A stretch of 64,000 bases of DNA, taken from Auanema rhodensis. Its lineage: Eukaryota > Animalia > Nematoda. A model generated the notes under the pieces. It did no database searches. It was not told the origin of the DNA and saw nothing but the letters and a program-made list of their open reading frames with translations. The DNA is taken from assembly GCA_964057225.1 (NCBI GenBank), contig OZ059896.1:15438001-15502000 (forward strand), given 5' to 3'. Made by a program: the position numbers and the translations under genes. Of this stretch, positions 1,987 to 64,000 are shown piece after piece. Each line of letters opens with the position of its first letter. Position 1 is the first letter of the stretch.

Positions 1987-6262
<4,276 letters not shown>

Positions 6263-13395: not shown

Positions 13396-15625
<2,230 letters not shown>

Positions 15626-28600: not shown

Positions 28601-31451
28601 TGTACCTGCCCAGACGGAGACTGTTCTCTCTCCCAGTCATGAACAAGGTAAACAGGATGAAGTGATTGTTCTTACCGTTTCTTTAAGTTTACAACCAAGT
28701 TTACGATAACTATCCTGCTCCAGTTGCTACCGATTCTGCTCCAGTTGCTACCGATTCTGCTCCAGTTGCTACCGATTCTGCTCCGGTATCCGCCGATGCT
28801 TATCCTTCTTTCGATCGGTCTCCTGTTACTTCCCATCCCGCCATCGTAAACTTCGATACTTGTGATGGAAAAATGGACGGATACTTTGCTGTTGGTTGCT
28901 CCAACAATTACTTCGTCTGCCAGGGTGGCCGTGCTATCGAAATGGTTTGTCAAGATGGACTAGTCTTCGATCAAAGAAGAATTGCCTGTGATTACAAATA
29001 CAATGTCGCTGCTTGTGGACCAACATCAGTCAAACCACCAGGTTGGTGCTTTTGGTTAAAACAAGCTTATATATTATTTAAGTTGACTCTTACGTTGCTT
29101 CACCCTCAAACGATGAGCCCGTTCCCTACAAGCCAACTGCTTCTGTTAATCCAACTGCTTTAGTTCAACCAACCATCGCTGTTCAGACTGCTCCCAAGCG
29201 TAAGATCTAGATCTATATTAATTTCATTGTTATTTGCATTATTCAGTCTGTAAGGGCAACGGATTCTTTGCGGTAGCTCCTTGCTCGAAGAAATATGTTT
29301 CTTGTAAGAATGGTGCTCAGCTCTTCTCTTTCACTTGCTCCGGAAGCGATGTTTTCTCTGAGCGTTTCGCCACTTGTGTTTCTAGAGCTAAGGCTGGATG
29401 CCCTGCTGCTGTTGATACTCCTATTCCTTACGTTCCCACCATTTCTCTTCCAAAATCCACTGTTGCTCCAGTCGCTAGAGATCAGGTCACGAATGGATAT
29501 ATCGGAACATTCGAGACTACCACATTCGCTCCTTCCAATTCTGAAAATTATCACAAGGCTGTTCCCTCTCTATCTGAACCAGTTGATTCAATCTACCACG
29601 TTCCAAGCTCCGATGATTCTGCTGTCCCCTCTACTGAGACTGAAGAAAGTAACGACTGTCCAGCTCGTGCGTATTCCACTGTTGACTGTTCTAACACCTA
29701 TAAACTCTGTGGTGCCGGTGTCGTGTTCGGTAAGAGCTTCCAACATATCACTATTCATTAATTGAATTATAGAATTGAATTGCCCTGCTGGTTTGATCTT
29801 CGATAGAGCCTCCGGTAGCTGTGAATTCCCACAATTTGTTGCCGGTTGTGAAACCTTCAAGACTCCTGGAAAAGATATTGTAGCTACCTCTGCCTCTCTC
29901 ATTTCCACCGAAGAAACTTCCAATCCTGAAGCTTTATCACAAAAAGAATCTTATGATGCCGTTATAGCTTCTGATAACAATGGATATACTTCAGAAGCCA
30001 CAACTTCTGCTTCAGAGAGTTATGCTTCGGATGCTACTACTTCCTCTACTGGCCTTGCACAAGACAACTCGTATGAGAGCAGTTCTTCAGATTCCAATGT
30101 TTATGGAAAAGAACAAACTTTTGAAAGTACTACCACTGCTTCCAATAATTATGTGAACGAAGATAGCTATGCTAACGAAGAAACCACTGCTTCCAATAAC
30201 TATGTGAAAGAAGATAGCACTGCTTCCAATAGCTATGCTAGTGAGGAAACCACTGCTTCCAATAACTATGTGAACGAAGATAGCACTGCTTCCAATAGCT
30301 ATGCTAGTGAGGAAACCACTGCTTCCAATAGTTATGCTAGTGAGGAAACCACTGCTTCCAATAACTATGTGAACAAAGATAGCACTGCTTCCAATAGCTA
30401 TACTAGTGAGGAAACCACTGCTTCCAATAGTTATGCTAACAAAGAAACTACCTTTGCTCCCGTTGTCGTCGCTCCTCAAGAAATCAAATGCACATACGGA
30501 AACGAGAGAACCTCGTTCGCTATAGGAGAATGCTTTAACAGCTTCAAAATCTGTACTGAAGAGGGACGTTTGATCAACGCTAACTGTGATAATGGACAAG
30601 TTTTCGATTCTGCGACCGGTGTTTGTGTGTTGGCTTCCTCCTGTGGTGCCAAGGTTAACATTATATTATTATTGCATTATTCAATTCATTCGTTTCAGCC
30701 TACTCCTGCTGCCTTGACTCCAATCACCCCTTGTTCTGGAAAGAAGGATAACGAACTTCTCGCTTATGGAGAATGCCGTGAATCATTTATGCGTTGTATC
30801 AATGGAGCCTCTATCACCGAGCATTGCCCACGTCGTCATGTATTCCACGCCGGACAACGTTTGTGGAAAGTGTTTGGCTGAACAACAACATTATTTTTTA
30901 GAGAGATGTCTTCCTCGTGAACGTATCAATGAATGCTCCGAAAGCCAAGTGGTATACATGACTCCATCTGCTAATCAATCCGAATTCTGTGTTGGACGCC
31001 GTGATGGCCTTTATAGAGATCCTAAAATGTGCTCTGGAATTATCCAGTGCTTCGGTGGAGAACTCTTTGCCAGACCTAGCTGTCCCACTGGATTGGTCTT
31101 TAATGAGAAGAATGCTCAATGTGACTACAGATATAACGTCCCTGGATGTGAAGAAGTTGCTGCTGATCCAGCACGTACGTTTGTATTTTTTGAGGGTAGT
31201 CTAATATATTTTTAGTCGAGGGAAAATGCAGAGGAGAGAAACATGGTGCCTACTTGGCCGACAGCAGTGACTGTAGTATCTTCTACCGGTGCGTCTGGGA
31301 TAAACTAGAGAAGATGAGCTGTCCAAGTGGAACTGTCTTCAACCCAGTCTTCTCCGTGTGTGACTGGCCTGCTAACGTTCCTCATTGCTTCAACGGCAAA
31401 GTCACTACCACTGCTGCACCATCAGCAGATGAGCCCATCAGACCATACTGA
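25691..31451 (+). CDS. Secreted multi-domain chitin-binding peritrophin-A (CBM14/ChtBD2, ~13 domains) mucin-like protein, CBD-1-like eggshell/vitelline component
   Basis: Signal peptide; repeated Cys modules (e.g. CDGQSDGNY..CS..YFSC..CPEGLVFN..CDYP) separated by P/T/S-rich linkers; stop TGA 31449-31451. Confidence 0.9.
28715..28784 (+). repeat. Coding 21-bp tandem repeat (~3.3 copies, APVATDS)
   Basis: CTGCTCCAGTTGCTACCGATT repeated. Confidence 0.9.
30132..30449 (+). repeat. Coding 33-bp minisatellite (ETTASNSYASE/DSTASNNYVNE-type units)
   Basis: ~9-10 copies of CACTGCTTCCAATA-anchored units within ORF 29775-30881. Confidence 0.9.
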
Positions 31452-35065: not shown

Positions 35066-36565
35066 ATGGCAGAAAGCTCAAAACCAAAGTCTGCTGGAAA
35101 TGAGGAGAATACTTATGAAAAAGAGGTTGGCTTTAATTCCTATGTTCACATTCCTATGTGATACTTTAAGGTAATTTCCAAGCATCCAGATCTAGAGTTG
35201 GCTCAGCTTCGTTTCTTAGTAAATCATCCTGAAATTGATCAACAGAAGAAAGCTGCTACTTTAGATCAAATTCAAAAGGTAGGGTGTTTTAGCCAAAACT
35301 TAACAATGTTTTTATTTTTTAGGCTATTAAAGAATATGATATGGCCCCATTCTATGAGCTTCTTTGTACTGATATTGGAACAAAACCAGATGTTGCTGAA
35401 CTCAGTGCTATGAAGCAGGCTAATGAGAAAAGAATAAAAGAAATTGAAGCAGAAATCGAAGATGCTGAAAAAAATCTTGGTGGTTCCGAAGTTCGACAAG
35501 CTTGGCTTCGTAAGTTTGATTACTTCTGTCAGATTGGAGATAAAGAAAATGTTTGCAAAGCGTTTACAGTGAGTTTTTTGAATCCTTTCTAGTATAATTA
35601 AAATTATTTAGTCAACATACGAAAAAACTGTTGGTATGGGCTACAAGATTGATCTTGTTTTTGCTATGGTCCGAGTTGGATTTTTCTTCCTTGATCATAC
35701 TCTAATCAACCAGTACATTACTAAAGCCAAAGAGTTGATGGAACAGGTATTACCTACATATGTATATTCTTAACACATTTGGATACTTATAGGGAGGAGA
35801 TTGGGAGCGTAAAAACAAACTTAGATCATATGAAGCTTTGTACAAAATGTCTGTTCGTGATTTTTCCGGTGCCGCGAATCTTTTCCTTGAAACAGTTCCT
35901 ACTTTCGGTTCATACGAATTGATGACTTACGAAAATCTTGTATTTTTCACTGTTGTCACTTCTCTTTTTGCTCTGGATCGTCCCGATCTTCGCACCAAAG
36001 TTATCAAATGTAATGAAGTTCAAGAACAACTTAATGGAGGTGGAATTAATGGATCTCTTATACCAGTTCGCGAATATTTGGAAGCTTTTTATGGATGTCA
36101 CTATGAGCGCTTTTTTGTTCAATTGGCTGCTCTTGAAGCTGAGCGCTTCAAATTCGATCGCTATCTCTCTCCCCATTTCCATTTTTACTCTCGGACAATG
36201 CGATTGAGGGCTTATGAACAATTCCTTACCCCATACAAAACAGTTCGAGTTGATATGATGGCTCAAGATTTCGGAGTTTCCAAAGGATTTATTGACAAGG
36301 AACTTCATCGACTTATAGCTGCAGGACATTTACACTGCCGGTATAATGTGTCTTTCCAAAAATTCGAATCTGATTATTGTTTTTATAGCATTGATGCGGT
36401 AAACGGAGTTATTGAGATGAACCACCCTGATTCCAAAAATCATTTGTACAAAACAGTAATTAAGTGAGTCCTATTCATTAAATTTCTCGTATACGAATTT
36501 TTTATAGGGATGGAGATATTCTGCTCAACAGAATTCAAAAATTGGCCCGTGTTATCAATGCATAG
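35066..36565 (+). CDS. rpn-7: 26S proteasome lid subunit RPN7/PSMD6
   Basis: MAPFYELLC, DAEKNLG.SEVR, GGDWERKNKL, PCI domain, IDAVNGVIEMNHPDSKN..IKDGDILLNRIQKLARVIN. Confidence 0.96.
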
Positions 36566-61936: not shown

Positions 61937-62114
61937 ATAACAATATGTTCTTACTTGTCCTGAATAAACACTTTGAACTTTAATATGTAAGAATATTCAT
62001 ATTTTAAACAACTATTAATTCACGTAATCACCCGCTTGTTACCTGGTTGGGAATCCCGGGTGCCGTAAGCTTTTCCCTTTTCTCATATTTTCATATAGTT
62101 TATCATCTTTAGTT

Positions 62115-62130
62115 ACCTATATGGTATACG
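62115..62130 (+). promoter_or_regulatory. snRNA PSE of U4 (repeated in each unit: +490, +980, +1470)
   Basis: ACCTATATGGTATACG at -58..-43 from U4 start, same offset as the U2 element. Confidence 0.75.
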
Positions 62131-62172
62131 GTTAACTAGAAATGCTTTCGTTTTCGGAGACAACTGTTAGAC

Positions 62173-62313
62173 AGCTTTGCGCAGTGGCGATAACGTGACC
62201 AATGAGGCTTTGCCGAGGTGCGTTTATTGCTGGTTGAAAACTTTTCCCAATTACCCGCGATATTCCCTGAAACATGGGTGATATACGCAATTTTTGAATG
62301 CCTGATAAGGCTG
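62173..62313 (+). ncRNA. U4: U4 spliceosomal snRNA, copy 1
   Basis: AGCTTTGCGCAGTGGC, K-turn 5' stem-loop CCAATGAGG..CCGAGG, TGCTGGTTGAAAACTTTTCCCAA, Sm site AATTTTTG, 3' hairpin GCCTGATAAGGC. Confidence 0.97.
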
Positions 62314-62442
62314 ATTAGCATATTATGGAAGATTGTTCCACGTGAAATGACGTCATTTTTCTCATGACGCGTCAATTTTCAAAACCAAATTAGAAGGAAC
62401 GGTTGCACTCCATACATATTCCGAAAAGTAAGGTAAGCATTC

Positions 62443-62561
62443 GCTTACGACCATACCACGTTGAAAGTACGCCATCCCGTTCGATCTAGCAAGTCAAGCA
62501 AAGTTGGGCCCGGTTAGTACTTGGATCGGAGACGGCTTGGGAATCCCGGGTGCCGTAAGCT
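62443..62561 (+). rRNA. 5S rRNA, copy 1
   Basis: GCTTACGACCATACCACG...AGTACTTGGATCGGAGAC..GGGAATCCCGGGTGCCGTAAGC followed by T-run Pol III terminator. Confidence 0.97.
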
Positions 62562-62662
62562 TTTCCTTTTTCTCATATTTTCATATAGTTTATCATCTTT
62601 AGTTACCTATATGGTATACGGTTAACTAGAAATGCTTTCGTTTTCGGAGACAACTGTTAGAC

Positions 62663-62803
62663 AGCTTTGCGCAGTGGCGATAACGTGACCAATGAGGCTT
62701 TGCCGAGGTGCGTTTATTGCTGGTTGAAAACTTTTCCCAATTACCCGCGATATTCCCTGAAACATGGGTGATATACGCAATTTTTGAATGCCTGATAAGG
62801 CTG
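62663..62803 (+). ncRNA. U4: U4 snRNA, copy 2
   Basis: Identical to copy 1. Confidence 0.97.
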
Positions 62804-62932
62804 ATTAGCATATTATGGAAGATTGTTCCACGTGAAATGACGTCATTTTTCTCATGACGCGTCAATTTTCAAAACCAAATTAGAAGGAACGGTTGCACTC
62901 CATACATATTCCGAAATGAAAGGTAAGCATTC

Positions 62933-63051
62933 GCTTACGACCATACCACGTTGAAAGTAAACCATCCCGTTCGATCTGGCAAGTCAAGCAACGTTGGGCC
63001 CGGTTAGTACTTGGATCGGAGACGGCTTGGGAATCCCGGGTGCCGTAAGCT
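62933..63051 (+). rRNA. 5S rRNA, copy 2
   Basis: As copy 1 with point variants. Confidence 0.97.
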
Positions 63052-63152
63052 TTTCCCTTTTCTCATATTTTCATATAGTTTATCATCTTTAGTTACCTAT
63101 ATGGTATACGGTTAACTAGAAATGCTTTTGTTTTCCGAGACAACTGTTAGAC

Positions 63153-63293
63153 AGCTTTGCGCAGTGGCGATAACGTGACCAATGAGGCTTTGCCGAGGTG
63201 CGTTTATTGCTGGTTGAAAACTTTTCCCAATTACCCGCGATATTCCCTGAAACATGGGTGATATACGCAATTTTTGAATGCCTGATAAGGCTG
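63153..63293 (+). ncRNA. U4: U4 snRNA, copy 3
   Basis: Identical to copy 1. Confidence 0.97.
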
Positions 63294-63422
63294 ATTAGCA
63301 TAATATGGAAGATTGTTCCACGTGAAATGACGTCATTTTTCTCATGACGCGTCAATTTTCAAAACCAAATTAGAAGGAACGGTTGCACTCCATACATATT
63401 CCGAAAAGAAAGGTAAGCATTC

Positions 63423-63541
63423 GCTTACGACCATACCACGTTGAAAATACGCCATCCCGTTCGATCTAGCAAGTCAAGCAACGTTGGGCCCGGCTAGTAC
63501 TTGGATCGGAGACGGCTTGGGAATTCCGGGTGCCGTAAGCT
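63423..63541 (+). rRNA. 5S rRNA, copy 3
   Basis: As copy 1 with point variants. Confidence 0.97.
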
Positions 63542-63642
63542 TTTCCCTTTTCTCATATTTTCATATAGTTTATCATCTTTAGTTACCTATATGGTATACG
63601 GTTAACTAGAAATGCTTTTGTTTTCCGAGACAACTGTTAGAC

Positions 63643-63783
63643 AGCTTTGCGCAGTGGCGATAACGTGACCAATGAGGCTTTGCCGAGGTGCGTTTATTGC
63701 TGGTTGAAAACTTTTCCCAATTACCCGCGATATTCCCTGAAACATGGGTGATATACGCAATTTTTGAATGCCTGATAAGGCTG
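63643..63783 (+). ncRNA. U4: U4 snRNA, copy 4
   Basis: Identical to copy 1. Confidence 0.97.
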
Positions 63784-63893
63784 ATTAGAATATTATGGTA
63801 GATTGTTCCACGTGAAATGACGTCATTTTTCAAAACCAAATTAGAAGGAACGGTTGCACTCCATACATATTCCGAAAAGAAAGGTAAGCATTC

Positions 63894-64000
63894 GCTTACG
63901 ACCATACCACGTTGAAAGTACGCCATCCCGTCCGATCTGGCAAGTCAAGCAACGTTGGGCCCGGTTAGTACTTGGATCGGAGACGGCTTGGGAATCCCGG
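63894..64000 (+). rRNA. 5S rRNA, copy 4 (cut by window end)
   Basis: As other copies. Confidence 0.95.

What the first reader, a model, noticed from the sequence alone, without database searches (positions are those of the whole stretch)
62047..64000. 5S rDNA array whose repeat unit co-carries U4 snRNA instead of SL1
Seen: each 490-bp unit is PSE - U4 - palindromic spacer - 5S - T-run, all on the + strand. The U4 PSE begins only ~44 bp after the end of the previous 5S. No SL1 exon (GGTTTAATTACCCAAGTTTGAG) is visible on either strand. Established: in C. elegans and many nematodes 5S is linked to SL1 RNA, and U4 is a low-copy dispersed gene. Inference: a Pol II snRNA gene has been captured into the Pol III 5S array and is amplified and homogenised with it. 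This could put U4 at 5S-like copy number, out of balance with U6, or mark a germline-type ncRNA array.
Basis: partly seen in the sequence, partly recalled or inferred. Interest (0 to 1): 0.82.

Follow-up and report, generated by a model that had tools for sequence, protein, structure and literature searches.

The report
U4 snRNA array carrying 5S genes
A roundworm keeps most or all of its roughly 119 U4 spliceosomal RNA genes in tandem repeats, and about 91 of them lie in this array, where each unit also holds one 5S ribosomal RNA gene; U4 seems to be a new partner for a known habit of 5S genes, but this is not the genome's main 5S array and U4 is not out of step with U6.

Summary
From window 62047 to the window end, a 490-bp unit repeats head to tail. 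Each unit holds a promoter element (PSE) at -57, a full-length U4 gene, a spacer rich in palindromes, a full-length 5S gene and a T-run, all on the + strand. No SL1 is present.

The array continues past the window to about C4:15,604,700. It holds about 91 units and is broken by young LTR retroelements.

- This is not the main 5S array. The genome has about 2,437 5S genes, mostly in 5S-only arrays on contig C3 and U2-linked arrays on C1. About 5% sit next to U4.
- The unit's spacers match no spacer of the sampled arrays, so capture into the 5S array is unsupported.
- U4 (119 copies) is not out of balance with U6 (171 copies, in its own 226-bp array).
- U1, U2, U5, U6 and SL1 each have their own array. 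The U1 unit also carries a tRNA-Asp gene, and the U2 unit carries two 5S genes.
- U4 is the conserved part. In at least eight units the 5S gene is truncated while U4 stays intact.

This is a new partner within a known kind of 5S linkage. The same array was noted earlier in this scan (s1-422442). Read evidence could not be obtained.

The parts
62047..62071 (+). Left edge of the array: the last 25 nt of a 5S gene, joined to unique flank
   Evidence: the repeat starts at 62047, and the sequence equals the 3' end of the full 5S copies
62116..62131 (+). PSE-like promoter element of U4 (CCTATATGGTATACGG), at -57 to -42. It repeats at 62606, 63096 and 63586.
   Evidence: five matches in the window against 0.16 expected, all at -57 of a snRNA gene; related motifs at a similar distance upstream of U1, U2, U5, U6 and SL1 genes of this genome.
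62173..62311 (+). U4 snRNA gene, copy 1
   Evidence: RF00015, 117.9 bits, model positions 1-138. Sm site AATTTTTG is present; it pairs with this genome's U6.
62339..62374 (+). Palindrome cluster in the U4-to-5S spacer: CACGTG, AAATGACGTCATTT and TGACGCGTCA. It repeats every 490 bp. The last palindrome is lost in the 471/472-bp unit variant.
62443..62561 (+). 5S rRNA gene, copy 1, ending in GCTTTT (T-run 62561-62564)
   Evidence: RF00001, 96.7 bits, full length; the consensus differs from the bulk 5S at one polymorphic site.
62663..62801 (+). U4 snRNA gene, copy 2
62933..63051 (+). 5S rRNA gene, copy 2
   Evidence: 98.8 bits
63153..63291 (+). U4 snRNA gene, copy 3
63423..63541 (+). 5S rRNA gene, copy 3
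   Evidence: 100.2 bits
63643..63781 (+). U4 snRNA gene, copy 4. Its unit is the variant with the 19-bp spacer deletion.
63894..64000 (+). 5S rRNA gene, copy 4, cut by the window end. The array continues to about C4:15,604,700.

Best explanation
This is the main U4 snRNA gene array of a nematode genome. It is not the genome's 5S rDNA array.

**Structure (shown).** Each 490-bp unit combines two independent transcription units on the same strand.
- The first is a U4 gene with the genome's usual snRNA promoter element at -57. It has no TATA box and contains an internal T5 run at its Sm site, so RNA polymerase II transcription through SNAPc is inferred.
- The second is a 5S gene with essentially the same sequence as the bulk 5S genes and a T4 terminator. 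It is inferred to be transcribed by RNA polymerase III from its internal promoter.

**Origin (inferred).** A 5S gene came to lie beside a U4 gene. The composite was then amplified and kept uniform by unequal crossing-over and gene conversion.

**Selection (partly shown).** Selection acts mainly on U4. The U4 copies are nearly invariant, and units with a truncated 5S gene persist.

**Context (shown).** The array is one case of a genome-wide pattern. Every spliceosomal snRNA and SL1 sits in its own tandem array, and three of those arrays carry polymerase III genes as passengers: U1 with tRNA-Asp, U2 with two 5S genes, and U4 with one 5S gene.

**Not shown.** Transcription, polymerase assignment and the origin of the unit are all inferences.
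For: - Unit anatomy.
- Extent: the array runs from C4:15,500,047 to about 15,604,700. The U4-to-5S spacer marker occurs 92 times, 91 of them inside the array. The U4 28-mer occurs 119 times genome-wide, and all 100 listed places are on C4.
- PSE: it sits at exactly -57 of U4 and of U2 in the window. Related motifs lie upstream of U1, U5, U6 and SL1.
- U4 function: U4 pairs with the genome's U6 at the canonical stems. Stem II scores -24.0 kcal/mol against -13.0 +/- 2.5 for shuffled U6.
- U4 is more uniform than 5S. 52 of 63 U4 copies equal the consensus (0.0015 differences per site). Only 17 of 54 5S copies do (0.0086 per site). Nucleotide diversity is 0.0025 in U4, 0.0145 in 5S and 0.013-0.014 in the spacers.
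- Eight units have a 5S gene cut to its last 71 nt by a 56-bp deletion while U4 is intact.
- The 5S consensus equals the bulk 5S except at one polymorphic site.
- Genome context.
- Not an assembly chimera. Units vary, LTR insertions with target-site duplications lie inside units, and runs from a second, independent study hold 0.73-0.94 of the sampled 31-mers.
Against: - Expression of either gene from this array and the true copy number are therefore unverified.
- The 5S copies here are no more variable than a small, best-score-biased sample of C3 copies (0.0053 differences per site). 'Passenger' status of the intact 5S copies is therefore not shown.
- Array copies are related by descent, so the variation statistics overstate significance. 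Segregating sites number 8 of 139 in U4 against 16 of 119 in 5S (p = 0.05).
- Nineteen of the 119 U4 matches were not listed, so a few U4 genes may lie off C4.
- The direction of origin (5S joining U4, or U4 joining 5S) is not resolved.
Confidence: 0.8

Rival explanations
1. U4 was captured into the genome's 5S rDNA array, rides at 5S-like copy number and is out of balance with U6.
For: U4 and 5S share one homogenised unit. U4 is low-copy and dispersed in C. elegans (PMC11822377).
Against: - There are about 2,437 5S copies against 119 U4 copies.
- The main 5S arrays lie on C3, and their spacers are unrelated to this unit's.
- U6 has 171 copies in its own array.
- U1, U2 and U5 are also arrayed.
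Confidence: 0.07
2. The polymerase III gene is a working part of the array and not a passenger. Under this reading, 5S genes (and tRNA genes elsewhere), bound by TFIIIA, TFIIIC and polymerase III, keep the snRNA arrays open. Alternatively they place the arrays in a shared polymerase II / polymerase III nuclear body, as at the C. elegans 5S-SL1 cluster.
For: - Three separate composite arrays occur in one genome: U1 + tRNA-Asp, U2 + two 5S genes, and U4 + 5S.
- The C. elegans 5S-SL1 cluster forms polymerase II and polymerase III foci (bioRxiv 10.64898/2026.01.07.698080; PMC11822377).
- Most 5S copies here are intact and match the bulk sequence.
Against: - The U5 and SL1 arrays carry no polymerase III gene.
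- Units with a truncated 5S gene persist.
- A solo U4 gene with the same gene body and 3' flank has no 5S gene beside it.
- There are no functional data.
Confidence: 0.12
3. The array is an inert satellite built from dead gene copies, and functional U4 comes from other loci.
For: Young LTR retroelements have accumulated inside the array. Some 5S copies are truncated.
Against: - U4 copies are nearly invariant and full length, each with a well-placed PSE.
- No other U4 family was found. All 42 covariance-model matches and all 100 listed 28-mer matches lie in these C4 clusters or the solo copy.
Confidence: 0.03

Closest known systems
C. elegans 5S rDNA-SL1 tandem cluster (about 110 copies, chromosome V)
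   Same: A nematode tandem unit pairs a polymerase III 5S gene with a PSE-driven, Sm-class small RNA gene transcribed by polymerase II (PMC1657053, PMC11822377, bioRxiv 10.64898/2026.01.07.698080).
   Different: - The partner here is U4, not SL1.
- Both genes are on the same strand here.
- This array holds only about 5% of the genome's 5S genes.
- SL1 has its own 252-bp arrays.
5S rDNA linked to U1, U2 or U5 snRNA genes in other animals: Crassostrea (U2), Solea senegalensis (U1, U2, U5), Asellus aquaticus (U1), Acropora (U1, U2)
   Same: Tandem units combine 5S with spliceosomal snRNA genes. Such linkages are said to form and dissolve repeatedly in evolution (as cited in PMC8167085 and PMC6204057; Drouin and Moniz de Sa 1995).
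   Different: U4 is not among the partners named in the papers I could read. My searches found no report of a 5S-U4 unit. The metazoan survey by Vierna et al. 2013 was not available to check.
This genome's own composite arrays: U2 + two 5S genes (C1, about 2.47 kb unit) and U1 + tRNA-Asp (C3, 727 bp unit)
   Same: A polymerase II snRNA gene and one or more polymerase III genes sit on the same strand in one amplified unit.
   Different: The partners, unit sizes and spacers differ, and no spacer homology was found. These appear to be independent assemblies.

Membership tests
U4 spliceosomal snRNA gene (Rfam RF00015) | Full-length match to the covariance model above the gathering score | tested here: met
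   117.9 bits against a cut-off of 46, model positions 1-138, four copies in the window; the same score along the rest of the array.
U4 spliceosomal snRNA gene (Rfam RF00015) | Base pairing with U6 (stems I and II) and an Sm site | tested here: met
   U4 positions 2-16 pair with the array U6 at -24.0 kcal/mol (shuffled U6 -13.0 +/- 2.5), and the stem I pairing is found. The Sm site AATTTTTG is visible.
U4 spliceosomal snRNA gene (Rfam RF00015) | snRNA-type promoter (PSE) at the position used by the genome's other snRNA genes | tested here: met
   the motif lies at -57 of U4 and U2, and related motifs lie upstream of U1, U5, U6 and SL1
U4 spliceosomal snRNA gene (Rfam RF00015) | Transcription and assembly into snRNP | not testable with these tools
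5S rRNA gene (Rfam RF00001) | Full-length match above the gathering score, and the same sequence as the bulk 5S genes of the genome | tested here: met
   90-100 bits against a cut-off of 38; the consensus differs from the C3 copies at one polymorphic site. At least eight units beyond the window carry a truncated 5S gene.
5S rRNA gene (Rfam RF00001) | Polymerase III terminator (T-run) directly after the gene | tested here: met
   the gene ends in GCTTTT, as in the C3 and C1 copies
5S rDNA linked to another small-RNA gene family in one tandem unit | Both genes lie inside the same head-to-tail repeat, in many homogenised copies | tested here: met
   about 91 units, with diversity of 0.0025-0.0145
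5S rDNA linked to another small-RNA gene family in one tandem unit | The partner is one already reported (SL RNA, U1, U2, U5, histones, 45S rDNA) | tested here: not met
   the partner is U4, and no report was found. The literature check is incomplete.
Nematode 5S-SL1 unit | An SL1 RNA gene inside the 5S repeat unit | tested here: not met
   no SL1 in the window. SL1 lies in separate 252-bp arrays on C3.

The most novel reading that the evidence does not exclude
In this nematode, polymerase III genes (5S and tRNA-Asp) may have been recruited as working parts of polymerase II snRNA gene arrays. They could act as boundary elements or as seeds of a nuclear body. That would explain why three independent arrays (U1, U2 and U4) each carry one or more. 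It would also make the C. elegans 5S-SL1 cluster one instance of a general design that mixes the two polymerases.
Probability: 0.12. Interest if true: 0.6.

Novelty: new member of a known kind. Interest (0 to 1): 0.35.

Why it matters
Linkage of 5S genes to other small-RNA gene families is an old, recurring observation, so a U4 partner adds a case and not a principle.

The genome-level picture is more useful. One nematode has put every spliceosomal snRNA, SL1 and 5S into separate large tandem arrays. U4 and U6 gene doses are similar (119 and 171). Three of the arrays mix polymerase II and polymerase III genes.

That makes this genome a natural system for two questions: whether such mixed units are accidents of amplification or serve transcription, and how concerted evolution treats two genes in one unit differently. 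For annotation, the locus should be labelled as the U4 gene array and as a minor 5S locus.

Tried and rejected
- **Read evidence.** I therefore have no read depth, no RNA evidence and no look at the junctions in the related organisms B and C.
- The 5S count used a 33-mer that overlaps those places.
- **More genome sequence.** Its 5S linkage rests on the 471-bp spacing seen and on an earlier unchecked note.
- **Relatives in metagenomes.** Two junction patterns found nothing in metagenome contigs. This says little, because the patterns need near-identical gene ends and similar spacer lengths.
- **Species identity.** Nematode origin rests on the canonical 22-nt SL1.
- **Literature.** The metazoan 5S survey by Vierna et al. 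2013 is not held.
- **Flanking ORFs.** Small ORFs in the left flank gave no Pfam match.
- **Rejected idea.** I first thought the 5S copies here were decaying faster than the bulk 5S genes. Their per-site variation (0.0086) is of the same order as in sampled C3 copies (0.0053). Only the truncated copies are clearly dead.

Full report
**1. Observation**

- Tandem Repeats Finder reports a single array at 62047-64000 with period 490, 4.0 copies and 96% matches.
- Rfam's curated thresholds give four full-length U4 genes (117.9 bits, cut-off 46) and four 5S genes (90-100 bits, cut-off 38). They alternate on the + strand, and the last 5S gene is cut by the window end.
- The array begins inside a 5S gene: 62047-62071 is the last 25 nt of 5S, joined to unique flank.
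- The SL1 22-mer is absent from the whole window even with three mismatches allowed.

**2. The promoter element is real**

I lined up the upstream regions of U1, U2, U4, U5, U6 and SL1 genes from this genome. They show a shared motif of the type CCCATATGAnATACGG about 40-65 nt upstream of the gene.

In the window, the pattern CCNATATGNNATACG occurs five times against 0.16 expected. Each match starts exactly 57 nt upstream of a snRNA gene: the four U4 genes and the lone U2 gene at 3012.

U4 has no TATA-like box near -30 and contains a T5 run at its Sm site. The U6 genes have the PSE plus an A/T-rich box. This fits polymerase II for U4, but that assignment is an inference.

The U4-to-5S spacer holds a dense group of palindromes: CACGTG, AAATGACGTCATTT and TGACGCGTCA. 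Their function is unknown.

**3. Extent and texture of the array**

I fetched 80 kb beyond the window.
- Within the first 72.5 kb (to C4:15,572,597) the array holds 65 U4 and 65 5S matches, all on the + strand.
- Five insertions of 3.9-12.3 kb interrupt it. Three have terminal repeats of 365-417 bp that are at least 99.75% identical, with short target-site duplications, so they are young LTR retroelements.
- Exact-word searches show that the array continues in further blocks to about C4:15,604,500. A marker from the U4-to-5S spacer occurs 92 times in the genome: 91 inside C4:15,500,387-15,604,509 and one at C4:15,358,755 on the other strand.
- Unit variants exist. The 471/472-bp form has a 19-bp spacer deletion. 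The 415/416-bp form has that deletion plus a 56-bp deletion that removes the first 48 nt of 5S.

The unit variants and the unique insertions argue against an assembly chimera. So does the sequencing-run search: runs from a second, independent study hold 0.73-0.94 of the sampled 31-mers.

**4. Genome context changes the reading**

| RNA gene | Main location | Unit | Other genes in the unit | Copies |
|---|---|---|---|---|
| 5S | C3:12.09-13.47 Mb | 529 bp (about 928 bp in places) | none found by Rfam | 2,437 genome-wide (33-mer, up to 1 mismatch) |
| U4 | C4, three places | 490 bp (471 bp in second cluster) | one 5S gene | 119 (exact 28-mer) |
| U6 | C1:6.375-6.399+ Mb | 226 bp | none | 171 (exact 25-mer) |
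| U1 | C3:15.86-16.08 Mb | 727 bp | tRNA-Asp(GTC) | not counted |
| U2 | C1:10.96-11.28 Mb | about 2.47 kb | two 5S genes | not counted |
| U5 | C8:10.43-10.53 Mb | 371 bp | none | not counted |
| SL1 | C3:6.74-7.10 Mb | 252 bp | none | not counted |

- All 100 listed U4 places are on C4: a solo copy at 14.557 Mb, this array, and a second cluster at 16.26-16.31 Mb.
- All 42 covariance-model matches for U4 lie at the same places.
- SL1 carries the canonical 22-nt leader, although its Rfam score (54-62 bits) is below the gathering score of 75.

So U4-linked 5S genes are about 5% of all 5S genes. U4 is nowhere near 5S copy number. Gene doses of U4 and U6 are similar. Arraying is a property of all small nuclear RNA genes in this genome.

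**5. Which gene is the conserved one**

- Among 63 full-length U4 copies, 52 equal the consensus (0.0015 differences per site). Among 54 full-length 5S copies, only 17 do (0.0086 per site).
- In 40 canonical units, nucleotide diversity is 0.0025 in U4, 0.0145 in 5S and 0.013-0.014 in the two spacers.
- Eight units carry a 5S gene cut to its last 71 nt while their U4 gene is intact.
- Copies share descent, so these contrasts are indicative and not formal tests. Segregating sites number 8 of 139 against 16 of 119 (p = 0.05).
- The 5S consensus here differs from the C3 5S at only one site, which is itself polymorphic.
- A small sample of C3 copies, biased toward the best scores, varies at 0.0053 per site.

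The intact 5S copies therefore look like ordinary 5S genes. I claim only that U4 is under tighter constraint and that 5S is dispensable in some units.

The array U4 pairs with the array U6 at the canonical stems. Stem II scores -24.0 kcal/mol against -13.0 +/- 2.5 for shuffled U6.

**6. Origin**

- The spacers of this unit share nothing detectable with the spacers of the C3 5S units, the U2-5S units or the other arrays I sampled. Homology with other 5S loci starts at +1 of 5S and ends at the T-run.
- That pattern fits relocation of just the transcribed 5S segment, or gene conversion confined to the gene. It does not fit insertion of U4 into the present main 5S unit.
- The solo U4 at C4:14,556,848 shares the unit from -57 (the PSE) to +73 past the gene and has no 5S gene. 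Its gene is identical to the array copies, its 3' flank is of the 471-bp type, and its promoter region is diverged.
- This defines a U4 module of about 270 bp to which a 5S module of about 220 bp is attached in the array. Which came first is unresolved.

**7. Comparison with what is known**

- Tandem linkage of 5S with SL RNA is known in nematodes. Linkage with U1, U2 or U5 is known in oysters, sole, an isopod and a coral. Such linkages are described as forming and dissolving repeatedly (PMC1657053, PMC8167085, PMC6204057).
- In C. elegans, the 5S-SL1 cluster forms separate polymerase II and polymerase III foci and binds the AT-hook factor ATTF-6. U4 genes there are few and dispersed (PMC11822377; bioRxiv 10.64898/2026.01.07.698080).
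- My searches found no report of a 5S-U4 unit. The broad metazoan survey by Vierna et al. 2013 was not available.
- I therefore file this as a new partner within a known kind. It works like the 5S-SL1 unit, but it fails that family's defining test because it has no SL1.

**8. Limits**

- I have no expression data, no read-depth copy number and no direct view of the junctions in relatives.
- In one search, organism B holds 0.76 of the sampled words. That share is larger than the flank or the genes alone could give, so it probably has a near-identical unit. Organism C holds 0.29, which the conserved genes alone could explain.

**9. Earlier notes of this scan**

- The same array was reported from a neighbouring window (s1-422442), with the same 'unreported partner' conclusion.
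- Other notes describe the 471-bp cluster (s1-378863), the U2-5S arrays (s1-387557) and the retrovirus-like elements inside this array (s1-378747).
- I confirmed the first and third myself and the other two in part.

**Verdict**

This is a modestly interesting new member of a known kind. The genome-wide arraying of all small nuclear RNA genes, three of them mixed with polymerase III genes, is the more notable finding.

Noticed in passing
window 2955-3201: A lone U2 snRNA gene (3012-3201, 147.7 bits) with the same PSE motif at exactly -57 (2955-2969). It lies 59 kb upstream of the U4 array.
   Followed up: partly
G000 C1:6.375-6.399 Mb; C3:15.86-16.08 Mb; C1:10.96-11.28 Mb; C8:10.43-10.53 Mb; C3:6.74-7.10 Mb: Every spliceosomal snRNA and SL1 has its own large tandem array: U6 226 bp (171 copies), U1 + tRNA-Asp(GTC) 727 bp, U2 + two 5S genes about 2.47 kb, U5 371 bp, SL1 252 bp. 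SL1 scores below Rfam's gathering score although it carries the canonical 22-nt leader.
   Followed up: partly
G000 C4:15506509-15518848, 15526880-15531720, 15532652-15540979, 15543817-15555889, 15567147-15571080: Five insertions interrupt the array. Three have LTRs of 365-417 bp that are at least 99.75% identical, with short target-site duplications at varied unit positions, so they are young and not site-specific. I observed them only and did not analyse them further.
   Followed up: partly
L001 (G000 C4:14555348-14558486), U4 at 1501-1639 on the - strand: A solo U4 gene identical to the array copies. It shares the unit only from the PSE (-57) to +73, with the 19-bp-deleted 3' flank, a diverged promoter region and no 5S gene.
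   Followed up: partly
L011, L013, L016, L017 (G000 C3 5S arrays): In the main 529-bp 5S unit, each gene is followed about 20 nt later by a roughly 35-nt fragment resembling the 5' part of 5S. Some units are about 928 bp, and the extra spacer has no Rfam match.
   Followed up: no
window 62339-62344; L056 261, 988...; L022 1463, 1715...: The E-box CACGTG occurs once per unit in the U4 unit (after U4), in the U1 unit (TTTCACGTGAAA about 50 nt after U1) and in the SL1 promoter just after the PSE. It is absent from the U2, U5, U6 and main 5S units sampled. It may be a shared regulatory site or chance.
   Followed up: no
L039 (U6 array): The U6 genes begin GCTCAGAAATGAGC, a short 5' hairpin that looks unlike the usual animal U6 start as I recall it. 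They still score 110 bits full length.
   Followed up: no
window 14270-15322, 29775-30881, 35838-36467: Long exons with Pfam matches to HSP70, chitin-binding Peritrophin-A and proteasome RPN7/PCI. These are ordinary neighbouring genes.
   Followed up: no
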